From contig JBNJNM010000011.1 of assembly GCA_052426225.1 (NCBI GenBank), positions 3,286,001 to 3,350,000 of the forward strand: DNA of 64,000 bases. The letters run 5' to 3'. A program made the position numbers and the translations under genes. Source of the stretch: Zancudomyces culisetae HAW-14-8. Its lineage: Eukaryota > Fungi > Kickxellomycota. Each line of letters starts with the position of its first letter. Position 1 is the stretch's first letter. Shown here piece after piece: positions 27,063-62,446 of the stretch. Below the pieces are notes generated by a model. It saw nothing but the letters and a program-made list of their open reading frames with translations. It was not told where the DNA came from and searched no databases.

Positions 27063-27893
27063 TCAGGGGTTAGCTACGGCCTTATTGCTATAATAAAGCC
27101 CATTGGCCTTTAGATTTTGCAAGGGTTCTGTCACTAAGTAGTATTGGGTTTGGATACCCTCTTCAAGAGAAAGTGGTGCCTCGGATCCACCCATATCGGT
27201 TTTCACCCATCCAGGATGAAGAGCGGCAAAGAATATGTGCCTGGGGTCGTCTTTATACATTTTCGCCAAAATTCTGCAGTAGGTTGTGACGCCGGTTTTT
27301 GATACATTGTATGAATCACTGGGGTATCCCTTCTCCTTGAGTGTTCCCTCCTTAAAGGATGTCAAGAACTTCTCCTGCAGCTGGTTCAACTGGTCTACAG
27401 TCAGCGTTTCAGATAAATATTCCTCTCTGATGGAGGCGGGATATTGGCTCAAGTTTCCCAACATACTACTTACAAAGAGCACACGTCCGTTGCTTTTGAT
27501 AAGAGGCATTATTGCGTCGTTAAGCTCAATAGTACTATTGTAATTGCATCTTATCGTCTTTTCTGCATGTGCATAATCGGATGCGCCTTTAAAGTAAACA
27601 CCAGCGTTGTGTACCATTATATCAATACATGGAGTGCCCATCTTTTCCATGTGCTTAGTGAACGAGTGAATGCTTTGCTTATCTGTTATGTCTAGCGGAT
27701 AGAACTCCAGATCGACCTTGGAACCAGTAGGAAGCTCGCTTTTAATCTCTTGAAGTGCTGACATACCTTTACTGCTATCTCTAGAGGTCATATAGATAGT
27801 GAGCGGTCCTTTTGACTCTACCGCCAACTTTCTGACTAAGGCTCTTCCCAACCCCTTATTTGAACCTGTAACAACTATCAGCTTGGAACTCAT
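27063..27893 (-). CDS. short-chain dehydrogenase/reductase, carbonyl-reductase (CBR1)-like
   Basis: TGSNKGLG Rossmann motif, HNAG, VSS, YNVSK catalytic motif, HPGWVKTDMGG. Confidence 0.92.
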   Translation of the reverse strand: MSSKLIVVTGSNKGLGRALVRKLAVESKGPLTIYMTSRDSSKGMSALQEIKSELPTGSKVDLEFYPLDITDKQSIHSFTKHMEKMGTPCIDIMVHNAGVYFKGASDYAHAEKTIRCNYNSTIELNDAIMPLIKSNGRVLFVSSMLGNLSQYPASIREEYLSETLTVDQLNQLQEKFLTSFKEGTLKEKGYPSDSYNVSKTGVTTYCRILAKMYKDDPRHIFFAALHPGWVKTDMGGSEAPLSLEEGIQTQYYLVTEPLQNLKANGLYYSNKAVANP

Positions 27894-28924
27894 TTTGCAA
27901 GTAAGTTATCTTATTTGGGAGGTGTATTTGTTTGTTTACTTTTATTTTGATGTTTTTTTTTCAAAACTGTATTTAAAAGCAAGCGAAAGCGGGATAGCTG
28001 GGATATTTATATACATTGAGATGATAACTGGTATTTTGGATTTTCATTTCAGTACGAATCCTGTTTCTGCTTAGCAACTTTCCTCACAAGCATTAATAAT
28101 CAAAATTCATAATGCAAATATTGAAAATAATGAAAATATCACACATTCACACGCATTAGTAATCAAAAGGCCAATATCATCGCAGGAAAAACATGCAAAC
28201 ATTCGCAATTTTACTGTTAGCTAGGGGATTTGCTAAAGACTTAAAAGATGGCCTTTTCTGCATATGTGCTTAGCACAGCGGACTTAATATTTGCAAACCA
28301 GATTTTGGTTTTTATTGGGTATTTTCTTTTTTTGGGGTCGTATATTTTTTCTTGTTAATGATGGAAAGGCCTGTCTCAGCTCCCCGTTGAAATTAAAAAA
28401 AAGAGGGTTTATCAACGCAACAAGCTACAAGCATCGAATAGTGCGTTATATGGCAGAGTCTAGTTTGTCACTCAAGCATATTCCTATCTAATTTTCGGAA
28501 TTGTACCAATTCAAACAATCATGGTTGCTCGAAATATACAAACAAATAAACGGGTACATTACCGCTTTCAAAATTGGTGGTGCTATAAAAAAATAGTTTT
28601 CATTTTGTTTTAGAGGTAGAATAACTAAGCAAGGTGTTTTCTATAACCAAGCATTGGTAGCACACCCTCTACCTGACATTACTCTCTCTTTCTTTTTTTT
28701 ATTACAAGATCCCGTACATCCACCAACTCGAGCAAAGAGGGATCTCCTCCAAACAAATAAAAAAATTTGTGTCTTTTTCATTTTTTTGGGTTTTCGGAAA
28801 CACCAACTGCAACTCTGATGCTCTTTAGTGTTAGTACAGTTAACAAGTATAAAATAATGTATTCACAGAAAAAAATGTACACAAACTAGGGGCTAGAAAA
28901 GGGTCATAAAATGTTTAATCTTAA

Positions 28925-38488: not shown

Positions 38489-39106
38489 ATGGAGAACAAC
38501 ACACAGACTAAACCCACGAATACTGACGATATTGAAGCGGTTGTAAAGTCAGATAAAATGATTGAGGTTGCTCGTTGGGTATGCTAGTTGTTTTTTTTTT
38601 CAGTTGTTTTTTTCCCTTTTAGATTTGGTTGATTATAACAGCTTTGAGCGCATTTCTGGGTGAAGGGGATGGGGAGAAAAGAGTAAAATAATAATAGACT
38701 AAACCATTTTTACATCATAGAGGAGAATTGTTGGTCATGCATTTGCTGGGGTCACGGAATCGGAGGAGATTTTGGTTAAATTCAATCCCACTACATTTGA
38801 TAGCGAAACGGAGGTGACAAATAGGTATATTCAAAATGGCACAACCCTGAGCATGTTCGCGATTTCAGCATTCTCATTCTATAAAAGACGACAAATCAAC
38901 AAGAAAATGCTGGGGAAAATTTCGCTGGTGGGAGCCGCGCCCACCATTTTTGCAGGTTTGGGTTCAGGTAAGGATATATACTTTTACTGATATTCTCTTC
39001 TTGGTTTTTGTTTTCTAACAAAAAAGTGTTATTAAAAATAGTGACACTGATATTTGGGCTTATGAATGGACGAACATTCCGTATCTTAGAAAGCAAAACC
39101 GAATAG
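38489..39106 (+). CDS. small hypothetical membrane protein (3 exons)
   Basis: Exons join in frame via GTATGC..TAG and GTAAGG..TAG introns: MENNTQ...VARW/RRIVGHAF...AGLGS/VTLIFGLMNG...KTE*; two hydrophobic stretches. Confidence 0.6.
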
Positions 39107-44587: not shown

Positions 44588-44663
44588 GTTTTTGTTTTTG
44601 TTTTTGTTTTTGTTTTTGTTTTTGTTTTTGTTTTTGTTTTTGTTTTTGTTTTTGTTTTTGTTT
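44588..44663 (+). repeat. (GTTTTT)n microsatellite, about 12 copies
   Basis: Perfect hexamer array between two convergent genes. Confidence 0.95.
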
Positions 44664-44777
44664 CTATATCTATTTTTCTCCGAATAATAGTATATTTTTC
44701 TCGTACTTTACCATCTGGTGTAATTATGTATGATAATTACTGCCCACAACACAGGTAAAATGAGGGTTTATGACTGT

Positions 44778-45884
44778 TCAACCCGCAAAAAGTCTTTTCA
44801 AATGATTTGAAAATATCACGCTCCTACTTTTTGTGAGTTTAAACTTTGGCAACGCATAAAAACTCTTTTTAGTTTTTCTATACTCCTCCAGCTTTGTGCC
44901 AAAAGTAGAATCGTAGTTGTTGAATGCTCCAGCCACTTTACTTTTGTCAAACATTTTTTTCAATGAATCGTTGATACCAGTTCCTTTTACACTATCAACA
45001 TATTCTTTTTTAGTTATGCTTTCTGCATCAACACTTGGGATACTTCTGAATCCGCCATCCCCTTGTCCAGCCAACTCGTACATATCAATCTTTTCCTGCA
45101 ACTCTCCATTTTTTGTGCTTGCCGTCACCGGCTTGCTTATCAATCTTTTGTCCAGATTAGCATAATATTTTTTCCCATCAATTATTTTGGCTTTTGGTTT
45201 TTTAGGTTTGTTTTCATCATGGTCGATGCTGAAGATTGTCGACTTGGTTTTCCTCAGTATCTCTTTCATTGAAAGAATACTCTTCTTAGTTGGTTTTGAA
45301 AATACTTTAGTTTGTGTTTTAAAGTAGTTCTCGCTTTCAAATGGGTCATTTTTCGGTACCTGAAGCCAAAATTCTAGCTTGTCCTCATCTTTATCTTCAC
45401 CTCTGCCTTCACCTGTGCCTTCATCATCATCCTTGCTTTGAAACTCATCTTTACCCACGTTCTGACATTCATTCTCGTTTACATTCCCATTCCTATTCCC
45501 ATTTATACTTTTATCCTTATCTGTGACCCTATTTATGTCCTTTTCAGCTTCATCCTCCCTTACCCTGGTCTTATTATTCAACTCTTTCTGGTCAAACCCA
45601 TTTCCTATATTACATGCCTTATTCTTTATTGCGCCATCCGATTGTACTTTTTTGAGAACTTCCTCTTTACATAACCTCTGCCTAATCATAAAGGTACTCA
45701 TCATCTTTTTAGGTCTTTTGTGGACAACATCTGTGCTTCTATCCACACCACTATAGGTTTCCTTTCCTATACCTTTGATGTCATCCTGAAACCGGCTCTC
45801 TTGACGAGTTTCTACTTTTTTACCACCGCCATCCGCATACTTCAGCAACTTTTCTTTGTTTTTGCCGCTCATCATATTCAGCAC
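44778..45884 (-). CDS. hypothetical Lys-rich protein (first ATG 45875; possible upstream exon)
   Basis: 368-codon ORF with purine-rich coding strand. The ORF start is directly preceded by CAG, which could be an acceptor. Confidence 0.6.
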   Translation of the reverse strand: MLNMMSGKNKEKLLKYADGGGKKVETRQESRFQDDIKGIGKETYSGVDRSTDVVHKRPKKMMSTFMIRQRLCKEEVLKKVQSDGAIKNKACNIGNGFDQKELNNKTRVREDEAEKDINRVTDKDKSINGNRNGNVNENECQNVGKDEFQSKDDDEGTGEGRGEDKDEDKLEFWLQVPKNDPFESENYFKTQTKVFSKPTKKSILSMKEILRKTKSTIFSIDHDENKPKKPKAKIIDGKKYYANLDKRLISKPVTASTKNGELQEKIDMYELAGQGDGGFRSIPSVDAESITKKEYVDSVKGTGINDSLKKMFDKSKVAGAFNNYDSTFGTKLEEYRKTKKSFYALPKFKLTKSRSVIFSNHLKRLFAG

Positions 45885-47368: not shown

Positions 47369-48422
47369 ATGATGTTTGCAAGGGTTACAACTCATTTCAG
47401 ACTTTTAAGGTATACCCCGAGTATAACGCGCATAAAACAGTACAATGTATTTCTAAATGGTTTAGGGTAAGAGCATTTATACTCGAATTACTTTTGCAAA
47501 CTAGCCGATCTTTTCCGGAAATAGAATGAACTTTACATGTGGATACGAATTAGATCAAATTCAACGACTTTGATGAGACAGTATTCCGACAAAGCCGGTG
47601 GTGTGGAATACAAATATAAAGTTGAATACGATAGAAATGTGGTTGGCGACAGTGGAAAGGATAAGATTTCTGAGGCGATAAATTCGGATCCTATAAAATA
47701 CTTCAAGGTATGTGAAGTAATAACTTTTATCTTTTTACACTTATAAATCAAAAAAGAATAAATAAAAAAATGATTTGGACGGTTGCGGGGGGGATGAAAC
47801 TATAGCCAAAGGGAATAAAATCCGAGGAATTCATCGAGTTTCTTCAAGGAAAAAGAGTAGGTTATGTCAACCAACCTCTGTTTACCATAAAGCACCGATA
47901 TTGGCCCAAAAGTGGGTTATTGATGGGTAATTTTAATTTTTTTTATACCTTTTCTAACCGTTTTTGGCCTTTACTTTGGTATAATACAACGCTTGCGAAC
48001 GTTTCACCCACTTTTTTAATCATACATGGATAATAGATTCAAAGGGCAGTGAAGTCAAAAAATATCGGTTCGGAATATTTTCGAGTAAAAAAGAGATTTC
48101 AAAGCTAGCTGTGGTGAGAAACAGGTGTAGAAGAAAGATCAGGAACTGCATGCAATACCTGGGTCCAGACTATGCTCCAAAAAGTAACTTTTTTTATTGT
48201 TTGCCACTTTGAACTGTATATTTGTAATTAAGTATTCTCACGATATTTTTACGGTTGTGTATGATGCAGGCTAATATGTTTTATTGTGATACCTTTTATG
48301 AACTAGATTCAGACTATATTGTTATTCTGAAACGGGGGATTGTAGATGCTACATACACCGAGGTATTAAACCAGCTTAAGGCAGCGTTGATCAAGATATC
48401 CAAAACAAAAACTAATAGATAG
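47369..48422 (+). CDS. rnpA: bacterial-type ribonuclease P protein (RnpA-like), predicted mitochondrial; exons 47369-47466, 47554-47707, 47806-47926, 48037-48183, 48307-48422 (211 aa)
   Basis: Four GT-AG introns splice in frame (636 nt including stop). Protein includes 'IKSEEFIEFLQGKRV..NQPLFTI', 'RFGIFSSKK', 'AVVRNRCRRKIR' (RNR motif) and 'DYIVILKRGIVDATYTEVLNQLKAAL'. N-terminal 44 aa have no acidic residue. Confidence 0.85.
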
Positions 48423-56082: not shown

Positions 56083-59000
56083 ATGTGGGGGTTTGTTCTT
56101 ACGTATATATCCGGACTATTGACACTTCCGACAGTTATAGCAATTACAATTCTGGTTTGGTACCTTAAGTCACCAAAGGTCAATCTTGCAACGAAAAAAA
56201 CGACAAAAACAACCTCTGATGAAAAATATGTGAATATAGCAGAAAAAAAGGTAGAAGATATTAGAGGCGGACGAAGGAAGTATGTCGATGGAAAACCAGC
56301 ACTGGCCAAGGAGGGAATGGAGATACCGAAAAAGGAGCGTGTTTCCCCCGAGAAAAAATACACTGTAGGAAGCAGTGAAGAGATAATATCAGGATGGATC
56401 AGAGTATCCCAGCCGGAATCAGCGAGTATTCTGACAGCTAGTGGACGGGTAATTTCAAGGGGAGGCACTATTTTTGCCAAAAATAAGAAGAAAGATCAGA
56501 ATAGAAAAGATGAAGAGCCGGAGAAACAGAGTTTTTCGCTTGAGAACAAAAACCGGATAAAAGGGGCGGTATCGTGTTTTGCACGACTACTAGGAGGTAC
56601 TCTGTCCTTGTATGATTGTGATGAGGAAAAAAAACAGTGTATAGGGACTTACTTGTTGTCAGAGTATGAAGTAAAACTACATACTGATGAGGAGTTTAGA
56701 GAAAGCAGAATTTATTCGAAAAAGTCACCAATAATTCTTCAAACCAAACAAGCACAATATGTATATGGTACTGAGACAAGCGATATAAAGGATGACAAAG
56801 AAACTGCGGAAGGTACACAAAAGCAACAAACTTTGAGTAAAAAAAAGGATGTCGCTACTAGAAAAGAAGAAAATGAAAAAATAGAAAGGAATAAAGAGGT
56901 AGTTTTATATATTTATACAGAGACTTCAATTAACAAAGAGGATTGGTATCTCGAACTACTGACATCATCCTTGATCAATGATGACAATCAAGAAAACGTG
57001 AGAAACAAAACAATAATATGTGAAGGGCTTCGATATGCAGCAGAAGACGATGAAAGGTTCGGGAAATGGGAGAATGAGATCGGGGAGACAAGTTGTGTTA
57101 TAGAAAGGGCAATAGAGAGATACTGCATCGGGATGCTAAAAACAAAAAAAATAAGGGATCTTTTTATTACCAAGCTACGACAAAAGTTTTCCAAACTTAA
57201 ATTACCAACGCTATTCTCAAGTATGACAATGACAGGGCTAGAAGTAGGAGAAGAAATACCAAAAATCAGCAATATCAGAATGAGCAGAGATAAGAATAAA
57301 CTAGGGCGCTTGGAGGTGGATTTTGATATGGAATATACAGGAGGATTCACTGTTACTGTGGATGTAGAAGTTAAATTGGTGAATATAACTTTGACGTTTA
57401 AAGTGATGTTTGAAAGCTTTGTTGGTCAAGGGAAGTTGGTTGTAAAGCGGCCACCATCGAACAGAATTTGGGTTGGGTTTAAAAGCTTGGATAGTCTAAA
57501 ACTGGAAATGCAGCACACAATTCTACAAAAGGAGATTAAATACAGAAAACTGATAAATGCTCTAAAGACAAGGCTTATAGAGTCGTTCAAGAGCTCAACT
57601 GAGTTACCAAATATGATGGATATCCTGTTTTTAAAAGCAAATGACACTGGTGGAATATATGAGGATATGCTGTATTATGGAGGTGACGAAGAGGATATTC
57701 CGTTTGTTGAAAGTAGTACAGGAACAGATTTCAACGGTTCACTCGCTACATCAGCAACACAAACTGCTGACGCGATCGTGGAACCAACAGATAAACTGAT
57801 ATCTGGAGGTAGTACGGAGAACATTAATGCTGGGGGAGTTGTAAAAACAAGTAGTTTTATTAACAAAGTATCAAGCATAAGAAGCAGGGTAAATAAAATA
57901 TTGACAGATAAGAGCCTGTCAACTGTAAGAACCGAGCCTTCTAATGTGGTTACCAGTGAGGGTAAGAAGAGCGTGATTACAGGGCATCTGGTCCAAGACA
58001 AACAGCAGGAGCAGATAATCAAATCGATGTTAAAGGAGCGGGACAATCGAAAGAGGACAAACTCCAACGTTTCGGCAATATCGTTGGAGGATGACCAAGC
58101 TGCTTCCAAGCTCCACCAAAAGTCCTCAGAATCGATGTTTTCGGATTCTGACAAGAAGTCAAAGGATGAACCAAAGAATCAGGCCAGAGAAGACGCCTAT
58201 TATTTGGCAGGCTCTAGTGGTACTGAGTCTAGAAGGAGTGTTTTGAAAGATACAACTACAAAAGACAATGCTCGTACTGAAGGCATTATTAAAAACAAGA
58301 CTACAGCATCACCAAATAAAATTCAACAGGATGCAAGTATTATACAAGATGTAGTCGACCAATATGCTAGTGTCAAACCCATACAATCTGGTCCTGAATC
58401 AAGTGCATCCAGAGCTGTGGATACAAAAGTACTAACGAAACCCAGCAAAGCTGCAATCACCCTTGCTAATGCTAATGCTGGTGTTGATGTCAACACAAAT
58501 ACACCAACAAACCCAATCATAAATCAAACCATAAAGCAAACCGTAAATCAAACTTTAAATCAAGACACAAACCCAACCGTCAACACCAAATCTAATTCTA
58601 GCTCTAGTTCTAGTTCTACTTCCAGTACACCTTTTCCTTCTAGTATAAGCACCACTACTACTCTTGTTGGGAACGCTGCTGAGCGGGCGGTCACAGATAC
58701 CAAAAACCATCTGACAGATAGCTCTCGTCCAAATACTGTTGATAGGATTTCACAGAAGCTAGAAATGGCAAGAAAGGGTAAAATGTCAGATGCTGATGGG
58801 TTTAGTGCTAGACTGCGAGCGAAAAATCAGTTGCTAGCAAGTTTGAAAAGCACCACGGCCACTAAAATACCATCCGATGATGACGATAATATCTCGATCA
58901 ACACAACTGCGTCCACAAGCACCTCTAGTAGTACCGACTCAAAACGGTCGGTTTTTGGTAAAACTAAGCACGGAATTTCTGGTCTCTTTTCAGCTGGCAA

Positions 59001-60288
59001 AAGCAAGCTGAGAAGTAAAAACTCAAATATCACCAACCCTACCATCAATGAAGGCACTAAAAATGACAGCATGTATCTTAAAACCAAGAAAATTGATCAT
59101 GCAACGCATGTAGAAGACCAGGTTGGCCATAAAGATCATTTTCTTGGGGACAGTGAATTTAAGCTTGCAGATCCAAAGATCTCCAATCCGCCCAACACTC
59201 AACAACTTAAAGACAAAAGCATGAACCATGATGGTACCCCTGCAATTGTCAATATGGATATCAATACCACTAAGCCCACCACTTCACAGTCACAGCAAGG
59301 TACACTCCGTCCTTCGCATATACATGACTCATCGGATACTCCCGAAGCTTCTTTAGAGCACCCACCTAGTTCTCTCGCCACCACTCCCCCCAAGGTCACA
59401 GCTGCATTTCCGCCGATAAATACAGACTCTTCCAATACTGGTACAGATACGAATGCTCCCACTTCAGATATCACAAAGAACAACGTTGGCGAGCCTGCCA
59501 CACCAAAACTCCCTGTAAATCAGGTGGGATATACTCCTGTTTCCATCAGTTTTCAAAAGCAACCAGATCAACCACCTACTACTGATGTTAGTCAACCCTC
59601 TTTACCTTTTCCCGACACTCACCTTCGCCGCACCTTTGACCTGAGTTCTCTTCCCGCCCTTGATGCAGCTTTACCTAAATATCCCTCGAGATCCGTTCAC
59701 GCCGCTCGCAACAACAGTGTTGATAGGACGGGAAAAGCCGCCTATACCTACCCAACCGATACACCTGCACTTGCAGCTAAGTCTGGTTCACAGCTCAGCA
59801 ATTCTACATCTCCACGATCTCCGTTGTTAATTGCAAGTCACAATTCTCCCAATACTGATCATCCTTTTTTTGGAGGTAGCAATAGTCTATACTCCTATCC
59901 CTCCGCTTCAAGTAAAAAAAGCTCCTTGAGAAGCTCCTTGGATTATACTGCGTCCCCATCACTAACATCAAATGTATTTTCTTCATCCACATATAGCGAT
60001 CGAAGCCCCTTAAATTCCGTTAAAGTTGACGATATAACCAATTTCGAGCGTTTGATGTCCCAGCCTCACCAAAATCCTGGATCCAGAAATCGGAGTGTAG
60101 TCCTAGACTTCGATGTACACTCTACCCCACAAAATACTATCTCTGGTGGTGGCGGTGGTACTAATGATGGCTTAAAGATCAATAACAACAGCGATGCTAT
60201 CAACAAGACTCTTGATTCCAATGGTAAAGAGAAGAAAGTTTTGGGCTCATATTCAGTGCTATTACAGCCTTTACCTAGACTTGAATAA
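56083..60288 (+). CDS. NVJ2: PH + SMP domain membrane-contact-site lipid transfer protein (Nvj2/TEX2-like)
   Basis: N-terminal TM 'YISGLLTLP', PH domain ending 'KEDWYLELL', SMP domain with 'KRPPSNRIWVGF' and 'LPNMMDI', long S/T-rich tail. Confidence 0.8.
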   Translation: MWGFVLTYISGLLTLPTVIAITILVWYLKSPKVNLATKKTTKTTSDEKYVNIAEKKVEDIRGGRRKYVDGKPALAKEGMEIPKKERVSPEKKYTVGSSEEIISGWIRVSQPESASILTASGRVISRGGTIFAKNKKKDQNRKDEEPEKQSFSLENKNRIKGAVSCFARLLGGTLSLYDCDEEKKQCIGTYLLSEYEVKLHTDEEFRESRIYSKKSPIILQTKQAQYVYGTETSDIKDDKETAEGTQKQQTLSKKKDVATRKEENEKIERNKEVVLYIYTETSINKEDWYLELLTSSLINDDNQENVRNKTIICEGLRYAAEDDERFGKWENEIGETSCVIERAIERYCIGMLKTKKIRDLFITKLRQKFSKLKLPTLFSSMTMTGLEVGEEIPKISNIRMSRDKNKLGRLEVDFDMEYTGGFTVTVDVEVKLVNITLTFKVMFESFVGQGKLVVKRPPSNRIWVGFKSLDSLKLEMQHTILQKEIKYRKLINALKTRLIESFKSSTELPNMMDILFLKANDTGGIYEDMLYYGGDEEDIPFVESSTGTDFNGSLATSATQTADAIVEPTDKLISGGSTENINAGGVVKTSSFINKVSSIRSRVNKILTDKSLSTVRTEPSNVVTSEGKKSVITGHLVQDKQQEQIIKSMLKERDNRKRTNSNVSAISLEDDQAASKLHQKSSESMFSDSDKKSKDEPKNQAREDAYYLAGSSGTESRRSVLKDTTTKDNARTEGIIKNKTTASPNKIQQDASIIQDVVDQYASVKPIQSGPESSASRAVDTKVLTKPSKAAITLANANAGVDVNTNTPTNPIINQTIKQTVNQTLNQDTNPTVNTKSNSSSSSSSTSSTPFPSSISTTTTLVGNAAERAVTDTKNHLTDSSRPNTVDRISQKLEMARKGKMSDADGFSARLRAKNQLLASLKSTTATKIPSDDDDNISINTTASTSTSSSTDSKRSVFGKTKHGISGLFSAGKSKLRSKNSNITNPTINEGTKNDSMYLKTKKIDHATHVEDQVGHKDHFLGDSEFKLADPKISNPPNTQQLKDKSMNHDGTPAIVNMDINTTKPTTSQSQQGTLRPSHIHDSSDTPEASLEHPPSSLATTPPKVTAAFPPINTDSSNTGTDTNAPTSDITKNNVGEPATPKLPVNQVGYTPVSISFQKQPDQPPTTDVSQPSLPFPDTHLRRTFDLSSLPALDAALPKYPSRSVHAARNNSVDRTGKAAYTYPTDTPALAAKSGSQLSNSTSPRSPLLIASHNSPNTDHPFFGGSNSLYSYPSASSKKSSLRSSLDYTASPSLTSNVFSSSTYSDRSPLNSVKVDDITNFERLMSQPHQNPGSRNRSVVLDFDVHSTPQNTISGGGGGTNDGLKINNNSDAINKTLDSNGKEKKVLGSYSVLLQPLPRLE

Positions 60289-60778
60289 TTTATTTTTTCC
60301 TTTTTCCTTTTTTCCTTCAATTCTCTTGATTTATTTTTCTTGGCATTAATCTGGCTGGAGTAAATGAAATATCACACGATTTCAAGGATCTCCAACTTTA
60401 GGCTCATCTACTCACCAAATAAAAAAAAAACAATATGAACTCTGATTATCACAAAAGTAAACAAAAACACAATGTAAAAAATCAGCCCAAATGAGATCAC
60501 TGATTGGGCTGGAGGCTTGTATCCTTTTCACATTCATATTTGTGGTTGTTTTTTTCAGTATTTCGTACTTTCCAGTTACTTTATTTAACATATAATTGTT
60601 ATTTTAAACATTTTGAGCGCTGATAGTATTTGCTATAAGAATCAATAAGTAAAGCGTGTCAAGTAAACAAACACATTCTCGGTCCTATTTTTAAAACATA
60701 TGGAAGAAGAATAACGATTAGGAAAAAGGGTAAAAGTAAAAATAACGACAATAATAATAACAGTGTCTGGCGGCCAAC

Positions 60779-62446
60779 ATGAATCGGCAGAGAAAACAAC
60801 AATTACATGCACACCAAGGCTCCAATAGTATCGGAGCTGAGGCTAGCAGCAAAAGCGAGTCTTTGAATCCAAAAACAATTGAATTAGAATTTTTTGGAAT
60901 TCCAGGAGTTGTCCTGGTAATGTTTGGTATGTCCTCCACGATCTTTTTCCTGTACCATTCCTGTAATGAAAAGGTGGGTTGTTCATTGCCAGCAAGTGCA
61001 GCCTCATTAAATCTGCTGTTAACCAGATTGCTGGACTTTTCCAACGCCTTTGATTTCAAGGCCTGTCTCGTCTACGCTTGCTGGTACGCGTTCCAGGCAT
61101 TGCTGTATTTGTATCTTCCAGGAGAAATTGTAAATGGGACTGTTCTGCGTAATGGGGATGTACTGAAATACAAAATCAATGGTAAGAAATTCTTCTTTTA
61201 TATTATCCTTTCTATAGATAAAATTAGGAAAAAAAGCAATTCATTTGAGCCATGCTGATTCCATGACTTTGTTTAAAATAAAAAGGCTTTAGAGCGATAA
61301 CCGTCACACTGATTTCCATGTATCTTGCGTACTCTGTATTCGGGTTCACTCCATTTATCTACGTCGCCGATCACTACCTCCAGCTTGCCACCGCCTCATA
61401 TATCTTTTCAACAATGCAATCAGTATTTCTATATGTTTACTCATTCAGAAAAAGCACAGATCCATCCTCACCAGAAACCATGTTGGCATTGGGTGGGAAT
61501 AGTGGAAGTCCATTATACGATTTTTTTATGGGTAGGGAACTTAATCCTAGGGTTGGGTCCATTTTTGATTTGAAATACTTTTGCGAGCTTAGACCGGGGC
61601 TGATAGGATGGGTAGTACTCAACATGTGCCTTGCAGTCAAGCAATATGTCACCTTTGGATATATTACCAACTCTATGGTTATTGTCTTGCTTACCCAAAA
61701 CTTTTATGTACTTGAGTCTCTTTGGAATGAGGTAACTAGCAACACGCACTAACCACTGTATGGATCGATATGCTTAAACAGAACCCTCTTGGCTAATATG
61801 CAAAATAATAATATATTTTTTATAGAGCAAAGTCTTGACTACCATGGATATCACTACTGACGGGTTTGGGTGGATGCTTTCCGTTGGTGATCTGAGCTGG
61901 GTTCCATTCACTTATACATTGCAAGCCCGCTACTTGTCATTTACACCTGTAGACCTTAGCTTTTTTTATGCCACCTGCGTATTCCTTCTCTCCATCACTG
62001 GATATCTTGTATTTAGACTAAGTAACACTCAGAAAAATGCTTTTAGAACCAATCCAAATAACCCAAAACTGAAACGTAAGTACTTCTACTTTTGTTTTTT
62101 TTTTCTTTACCCAGTTCAACTATAAAAAAAAAGTAAATTATTTGTACGTCTTGTTGATTTAGATTTGAGATACATTGAAACCAGAGCCAAAACCAAATTG
62201 CTGGTGAGTGGTTGGTGGGGCCTCGCACGGCACATCAACTACACTGGAGACTGGCTTTTAGGTCTTTCTCAGTGTCTCGCCACAGGATTTTCGACGCCGA
62301 TCACCTATTTCTTTTCTATATACTTTTTGATTCTGTTGGTACATCGTTTTTATAGGGATGAACACAAGTGTAAAGTGAAGTATGGCGATGACTGGGTCAA
62401 ATACTGCAGCCTAGTTCCTTACAAGTTTATCCCATATATCTACTAG
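60779..62446 (+). CDS. ERG24: sterol C-14 reductase (ERG24/LBR family); exons 60779-61181, 61286-61731, 61826-62075, 62163-62446
   Basis: 'LEFFG', 'YDFFMGRELNPR', 'DLKYFCELRPGLIGW', 'TTMDITTDGFGWML', 'LLVSGWWGLARHINYTGDW', 'KYGDDW.KY...VPY'. Confidence 0.93.

What the first reader, a model, noticed from the sequence alone, without database searches (positions are those of the whole stretch)
47369..48422. Hidden 5-exon nuclear gene encoding a bacterial-type RNase P protein (RnpA) in a fungus
Seen in sequence: four canonical GT-AG introns (47467-47553, 47708-47805, 47927-48036, 48184-48306; phases 2, 0, 1, 1) splice into a stop-free 211-aa frame. The ORF track catches only exon 2. The C-terminal ~125 aa follow RnpA element by element: helix 'IKSEEFIEFLQGKRV', strand 'RFGIFSSKK', the signature 'AVVRNRCRRKIR' (RNR at 48117-48125), strand 'DYIVIL' and final helix 'ATYTEVLNQLKAALIKI'. 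Established: RnpA is the single protein of bacterial RNase P. Eukaryotic nuclear RNase P uses Pop/Rpp proteins, budding-yeast mitochondria use the unrelated Rpm2, and animal mitochondria use protein-only PRORP. Mitochondrial genomes of several zygomycete fungi encode bacteria-like RNase P RNAs. Inference: this protein partners a mitochondrion-encoded rnpB, giving a bacterial-style ribozyme split between two genomes. The introns argue against bacterial contamination. I cannot check whether orthologues are already described.
Basis: partly seen in the sequence, partly recalled or inferred. Interest (0 to 1): 0.92.

Follow-up and report, generated by a model that had tools for sequence, protein, structure and literature searches.

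The report
Bacterial-type RNase P protein in fungi
An insect-gut fungus carries an intron-containing nuclear gene for the bacterial protein subunit of the tRNA-trimming enzyme RNase P, most likely the unidentified partner of the tiny RNase P RNA in its mitochondrial genome; this arrangement is known from a green alga and a protist but is not described for fungi in the papers I could read.

Summary
Confirmed. The genome is Zancudomyces culisetae (mtDNA period 58,654 bp). Four GT-AG introns give a stop-free 211-codon frame. Exon 4 alone passes the Pfam Ribonuclease_P cut-off. Syntenic orthologues in Smittium and Furculomyces are 32-50% identical per exon, have saturated synonymous sites, and share intron positions 2, 3 and 4. 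A model of the S. culicis orthologue matches only RnpA structures, and an ESM Atlas cluster of 77 eukaryotic proteins (mostly Zoopagomycota) is its nearest shape. The mitochondrial contig holds a ~180-nt rnpB with P1 and a perfect P4 (3 of 1000 shuffles); no PRORP or Rpm2 was found. Corrections: exon 1/intron 1 has no orthologue support (an in-frame ATG at 47537 gives a 4-exon, 184-aa alternative), and the partner RNA is the published minimal type (P1+P4), not a bacteria-like one, so most bacterial RnpA contact sites are missing. Origin (endosymbiont or lateral transfer) is unresolved. Nuclear RnpA with organellar rnpB is known in Ostreococcus and Andalucia; the S. culicis protein already has the automatic database name. 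I found no paper on fungal RnpA but could not read Lechner 2015. No RNA runs were listed; localisation and activity are untested. The scan has no earlier finding of this on other DNA.

The parts
47369..47466 (+). Putative exon 1 (32 codons, 5 R/K, no D/E; presequence-like). Not supported by orthologues
   Evidence: best ATG context is 47372 (A at -3); GGTAAG donor follows
47467..47553 (+). Putative intron 1 (87 nt, GT-AG, phase 2); contains the alternative in-frame ATG at 47537
   Evidence: no orthologue or read support
47537..47539 (+). Alternative start codon, in frame with exon 2 (4-exon, 184-aa model with a short presequence ending R-Q-Y|S)
47554..47707 (+). Exon 2: end of presequence-like part (R-Q-Y|S), charged linker, conserved K-Y-F-K just before intron 2
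   Evidence: KYFK shared with both orthologues
47708..47805 (+). Intron 2 (98 nt, phase 0), same position in S. culicis and F. boomerangus
47806..47926 (+). Exon 3: helix alpha1, strands beta1-beta2 and start of a lineage-specific 10-14 aa loop insertion
   Evidence: 47% identical to F. boomerangus, 39% to S. culicis; elements from the orthologue model
47927..48036 (+). Intron 3 (110 nt, phase 1), same position in F. boomerangus, absent in S. culicis
48037..48183 (+). Exon 4: strand beta3 and RNR helix (RNR at 48117-48125)
   Evidence: PF00825 28.1 bits > 22.3; only PDB hit is RnpA; 50% identical to both orthologues
48184..48306 (+). Intron 4 (123 nt, phase 1), same position in both orthologues
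48307..48422 (+). Exon 5: strand beta4, C-terminal helix, stop
   Evidence: PF00825 model 80-108, E 0.08; 32-41% identical to orthologues

Best explanation
[quoted passage not shown] The protein is imported into mitochondria, binds the mitochondrion-encoded ~180-nt RNase P RNA (rnpB between cox1 and cox3 on contig C18) and the 5' leaders of precursor tRNAs, and so lets the RNA's P4 centre cut the 5' ends of the clustered mitochondrial tRNAs. Because that RNA has lost P2/P3 and any recognisable specificity domain, further proteins probably complete the enzyme. Shown: gene structure of exons 2-5, homology, purifying selection, the rnpB gene. Inferred: import, binding, catalysis, extra subunits.
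For: [quoted passage not shown]
Against: No expression, localisation or activity data. The mt RNA lacks P2, P3 and J18/2, three of the four RNA elements that RnpA binds in bacteria. The N-terminal Arg of the bacterial R-L-K-K motif is Gly in all three fungi. Presequence was judged by composition only (hydrophobic moment 0.35-0.5). The PRORP/Rpm2 searches had no positive control. The fold was predicted for the orthologue with bacterial RnpA rows in the alignment, which biases it.
Confidence: 0.78

Rival explanations
1. A repurposed mitochondrial RNA-binding protein of RnpA descent (for example a group I intron splicing aid, RNA-decay factor or mitoribosome accessory) while other proteins serve the minimal P RNA, as Rpm2 does in yeast.
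For: The RNA partner lacks P2/P3; the mtDNA has split cox1 with intron ORFs; a Staphylococcus RnpA has a reported mRNA-degradation activity (PDB title); lineage-specific KYFKPxG motif and loop insertion.
Against: RNR motif and flanking K/A/R positions are invariant; CR-V, the fourth RnpA contact, is intact in the RNA; no Rpm2 or PRORP found.
Confidence: 0.13
2. The protein works outside mitochondria (nucleus or cytosol), for example with the unusually large nuclear RNase P RNA noted elsewhere in this genome.
For: Targeting is unproven and the first exon is uncertain.
Against: Presequence-like N-termini in three species; Pop4 and Pop5 genes are present; no known case of a bacterial-type organellar RNase P co-opted to another compartment (PMC10941002).
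Confidence: 0.05
3. On origin only: the gene came by lateral transfer from a non-mitochondrial bacterium into an early zoopagomycete, not from the mitochondrial endosymbiont. It could still act in mitochondrial RNase P.
For: AU test rejects none of five bacterial groups as sister (p 0.37-0.60); group HMM scores for Patescibacteria equal those for Alphaproteobacteria; RnpA is described as lost or very patchy in eukaryotes.
Against: Alphaproteobacterial HMM scores are among the two highest (51-52 bits); one quick tree put the fungi inside Alphaproteobacteria, though it was not the best tree; the cognate rnpB is retained in mtDNA, which makes continuous inheritance the simpler account (inference).
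Confidence: 0.3
4. Bacterial contamination, pseudogene or chance splice model.
For: No RNA reads seen.
Against: Conserved introns, synteny and purifying selection in three genera; chromosome-scale eukaryotic contig (16).
Confidence: 0.01

Closest known systems
Bacterial RnpA (PF00825, TIGR00188; B. subtilis 1a6f, S. aureus 6d1r, T. maritima 1nz0/3q1q)
   Same: Fold, element order, RNR motif, size of the core domain
   Different: Nuclear, spliced, N-terminal extension of 50-85 aa, 10-14 aa insertion between strands 2 and 3, 1-2 aa insertion before the RNR helix, only about 20-25% identity; RNA partner lacks P2/P3
[quoted passage not shown] 2011, via PMC4919922)
   Same: Nuclear RnpA with organelle-encoded P RNA
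   Different: Green alga with two organellar P RNAs and a PRORP; activity shown there, compartment not established; here a fungus with one minimal mt RNA and no PRORP found
Andalucia godoyi mitochondrion-targeted RnpA (PMC7050145)
   Same: Diverged nuclear RnpA predicted mitochondrial, with mtDNA rnpB
   Different: Jakobid with a fully bacterial-type P RNA; listed there as a primitive trait lost in most eukaryotes
Saccharomyces mitochondrial RNase P (RPM1 RNA + Rpm2)
   Same: Equally reduced mt RNA (P1+P4) needing a nuclear-encoded protein
   Different: Rpm2 is large and unrelated to RnpA; no Rpm2 hit here
Smittium culicis OMJ07481.1 / UniProt A0A1R1WYN4
   Same: Orthologue, automatically named 'Ribonuclease P protein component'
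   Different: Database label only; lacks intron 3; no paper found

Membership tests
RnpA / PF00825 | Score above the Pfam gathering cut-off | tested here: met
   Exon 4 alone 28.1 bits > 22.3; orthologues 44-49 bits
RnpA / TIGR00188 equivalog | Whole-protein score above 38.35 | tested here: inconclusive
   Exon 4 alone 27.7; joined protein not searched; orthologues 40.2 (met) and 34.9 (not met)
RnpA / PF00825 | RNR motif with flanking K, A and R positions | tested here: met
   A-V-x-R-N-R-x-x-R invariant in alignments, with a 1-2 residue insertion upstream
RnpA / PF00825 | [quoted passage not shown] | tested here: met
   On the S. culicis orthologue: pLDDT 83.6, Foldseek E 5e-8, TM 0.63/0.76; alignment contained bacterial RnpA; a shallow-alignment model failed; the Atlas's own model gives the same neighbour. 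The window's joined protein was not folded
RnpA / PF00825 | Central cleft with aromatic residues on helix 1 that binds the pre-tRNA leader | tested here: inconclusive
   Helix 1 keeps F at the first and L at the second conserved hydrophobic position; N-terminal Arg replaced by Gly (role of these positions from my own knowledge)
Bacterial-type RNase P holoenzyme | Cognate P RNA with CR-I, CR-V and helix P4 | tested here: met
   G000:C18:27855-28033 (+), unique in genome, 3/1000 shuffles
Bacterial-type RNase P holoenzyme | P RNA with P2, P3, J18/2 and a specificity domain | tested here: not met
   Only 8 nt lie between the P1 5' strand and CR-I; Rfam RF00010 finds nothing; literature: confined to P1 and P4
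Bacterial-type RNase P holoenzyme | One RNA plus one protein suffice for pre-tRNA cleavage | not testable with these tools
   Needs reconstitution
Mitochondrial matrix protein | Cleavable basic amphipathic presequence and import | tested here: inconclusive
   Basic, acid-poor N-termini and R-x-Y|S/T in three species; moment 0.35-0.5; no predictor or experiment

The most novel reading that the evidence does not exclude
Zoopagomycete fungi have kept the mitochondrial endosymbiont's own RnpA, unreported in the animal-fungal lineage, and in Z. culisetae it forms an active RNase P with a ~180-nt RNA reduced to P1 and P4, the smallest bacterial-type ribonucleoprotein RNase P, docking without the P2/P3 elements used in bacteria.
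Probability: 0.3. Interest if true: 0.85.

Novelty: new variant of a known kind. Interest (0 to 1): 0.64.

Why it matters
Reviews state that the proteins of fungal mitochondrial RNase P are unknown outside budding yeast (PMC3790967) and appear distinct from the bacterial one (PMC4394434), and RnpA is counted among primitive traits of jakobids and prasinophytes (PMC7050145). A conserved fungal RnpA names a concrete candidate, makes the composition of zygomycete mitochondrial RNase P testable by reconstitution and E. coli rnpA49 complementation, and suggests Rpm2 is a later replacement. Its pairing with one of the smallest P RNAs offers a natural test of how little RNA the bacterial protein needs.

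Tried and rejected
RNA runs: none listed, so no reads were laid. Rfam did not detect the mt rnpB; a motif and pairing scan did. Folding energy of the RNA is no better than shuffles (z -0.38), so it gives no support by itself. Word-index protein searches did not reach fungal homologues outside Harpellales; metagenome scans gave only bacterial-looking RnpA loci. A shallow-alignment structure model was unusable. Trees on 115 columns were unresolved; the starred alphaproteobacterial grouping was rejected as evidence because constrained trees scored higher. The Sec63-RnpA 'fusion' in Furculomyces and S. angustum is rejected as a gene-calling merge with the upstream MER3 (own ATG at L013:7062). P0003 (fish Ig protein) is a chance hit. 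Ten paper searches found no report of fungal RnpA; Lechner 2015, Seif 2003 and Seif 2005 were not held.

Full report
Observation. The four introns are at the stated coordinates, all GT-AG, phases 2, 0, 1, 1, each with stops in all three frames; the join is 211 codons plus stop. The join was made once in a script to check the frame. Exon 4 (48 aa) passes the Pfam Ribonuclease_P cut-off alone (28.1 against 22.3 bits, E 2e-6, model 39-69) and exon 5 matches model 80-108 weakly. TIGR00188 rnpA is the only NCBIfam hit and the only PDB sequence hit is an RnpA. The gene is single copy in a 27.1-Mb, 25-contig assembly and lies 3.3 Mb into contig C11.

Organism. Contig C18 is the mtDNA: 61,188 nt, 18% GC, repeating at 58,654. 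Both numbers match the published Zancudomyces culisetae assembly (PMC12611240), a harpellid insect-gut fungus (Zoopagomycota).

Orthologues. Exon 4 against 1.84 billion representatives found two real relatives: Smittium culicis OMJ07481.1 (178 aa, automatically named Ribonuclease P protein component) and the C-terminus of Furculomyces boomerangus PVU88580.1, with S. angustum PVZ97555.1 in its cluster. The latter two are gene-calling merges with the upstream MER3 helicase; F. boomerangus has its own ATG at L013:7062. All loci lie downstream of MER3 and of a shared 135-aa gene. Introns 2 and 4 are at the same position and phase in all three genera, intron 3 is shared with F. boomerangus, and S. 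culicis reads through exons 3-4 without it. Per exon, amino-acid identity is 32-50% with synonymous sites saturated (pS 0.62-0.98) and pN 0.32-0.45. This excludes contamination, a pseudogene and a chance splice model for exons 2-5. The ESM Atlas's nearest shape is a 77-member cluster, all eukaryotic, mostly Zoopagomycota, 82% PF00825, so the family extends well beyond these three genera; I could not fetch its members or test Mucoromycota.

First exon. Orthologues have one exon of 51 or 79 codons before the conserved K-Y-F-K intron. Both N-termini are basic and acid-poor and end in R-Q-Y|S, matching R-S-Y|T and R-L-Y|S in the orthologues. The strong GGTAAG donor, the better ATG context at 47372 and the T-rich stretch just upstream favour the 5-exon model modestly (my estimate about 60:40). 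No RNA run was listed.

Fold. A model of the S. culicis core from a 51-row alignment reached pLDDT 83.6 with the RnpA order of elements; all 16 Foldseek hits at E<=0.001 are RnpA structures, best E 5e-8, and the next hit is at 0.03. The alignment held bacterial RnpA rows, so this is not fully independent; a 5-row model failed. The orthologue-only profile also finds only RnpA in the PDB, weakly. Differences from bacteria: a 10-14 aa low-confidence loop between strands 2 and 3, one or two extra residues before the RNR helix, Gly for the N-terminal Arg, and a conserved KYFKPxG motif before helix 1.

Partner RNA. Rfam finds no RNase P RNA on the mtDNA. A motif scan finds CR-I at C18:27870 and CR-V at C18:28002, which pair into an 8-bp P4 with the bulged U; this combination occurs once and in 3 of 1000 shuffles. 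P1 closes 27855-27861 with 28027-28033; the gene lies between cox1 and a cox3-like ORF. This fits the published minimal RNA of this species, confined to P1 and P4 (PMC3790967; shortest zygomycete length 188 nt). So rnpB itself is known, and it is not one of the bacteria-like zygomycete RNAs. In bacteria RnpA binds P2, P3, J18/2 and CR-V (PMC4919922); only CR-V is recognisable here. The mtDNA carries a full tRNA set, many in clusters with spacers of a few bases, so 5' processing is needed. PRORP and Rpm2 models found nothing, without a positive control; PRORP is reported absent from fungi. Pop4 and Pop5 family genes are present for the nuclear enzyme.

Mechanism. Most likely (0.78) the protein is imported, loses its presequence, binds the rnpB RNA near CR-V/P4 through the RNR helix and holds the pre-tRNA leader in its cleft, while the RNA supplies the catalytic centre. 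Further proteins probably replace the lost RNA domains. Gene, homology, selection and RNA gene are shown; import, binding and catalysis are inferred from the bacterial and algal enzymes. The main rival (0.13) is a repurposed mitochondrial RNA-binding role.

Origin. With evenly drawn RnpA from five bacterial groups, group HMMs score the orthologues highest for Alphaproteobacteria and Patescibacteria. The fungi sit on a long branch in an open fork. One quick tree placed them in Alphaproteobacteria but was not the best tree, and an AU test rejects no group (p 0.37-0.60). Endosymbiotic origin is the simpler account because rnpB is still in the mtDNA, but it is not shown; Bacteroidota and other phyla were not sampled.

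Comparison and novelty. Nuclear RnpA with organellar rnpB is established in Ostreococcus tauri, with in vitro activity and E. coli complementation, and predicted in Andalucia godoyi, whose authors name only prasinophytes as precedent (still listed as an Andalucia trait in 2025). Reviews call the proteins of fungal mitochondrial RNase P largely unknown and distinct from the bacterial one. Ten searches found no paper on fungal RnpA, but the survey most likely to mention it (Lechner 2015) is not held, and the S. culicis orthologue already has the automatic name. I rate it a new variant of a known kind: known architecture, new kingdom as far as I can check, with an unusually small RNA. Interest 0.64.

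Noticed in passing
L013:6001-7904 and L243:3001-4904: F. boomerangus PVU88580.1 and S. angustum PVZ97555.1 are annotated as Sec63 + RNase P fusions; they are merges of the MER3 3' part with the RnpA gene, which hides it in databases.
   Followed up: yes
window 44778-45884 (-): 368-aa charged ORF without Pfam hit between MER3 and the RnpA gene; in F. boomerangus the two genes are only about 300 nt apart and no match was seen in either orthologous locus.
   Followed up: partly
window about 44590-44670: Hexanucleotide microsatellite just downstream of MER3 (reads as FC/VF repeats in the ORF list).
   Followed up: no
G000:C18:27855-28033: The minimal mitochondrial RNase P RNA is missed by all Rfam models even at E 5; only a P4 motif scan finds it.
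   Followed up: yes
G000:C18:1-2534 and 58655-61188: The mitochondrial contig repeats its start after 58,654 nt (assembly overlap).
   Followed up: yes
G000:C18:5669 (-), 27042 (+), 11036 (-), 13631 (+): tRNA-Gly(TCC) occurs twice, and two tRNA-like elements have a defective anticodon loop.
   Followed up: no
ESM Atlas: Two unnamed clusters, mostly Ascomycota (136 and 196 aa), score 0.78 and 0.75 by features against the Furculomyces RnpA region; below the reliable range, but worth testing as very diverged ascomycete RnpA.
   Followed up: no
window 38721-38972: Small gene upstream of MER3 conserved in position in Smittium and Furculomyces (135-aa product, no Pfam).
   Followed up: partly
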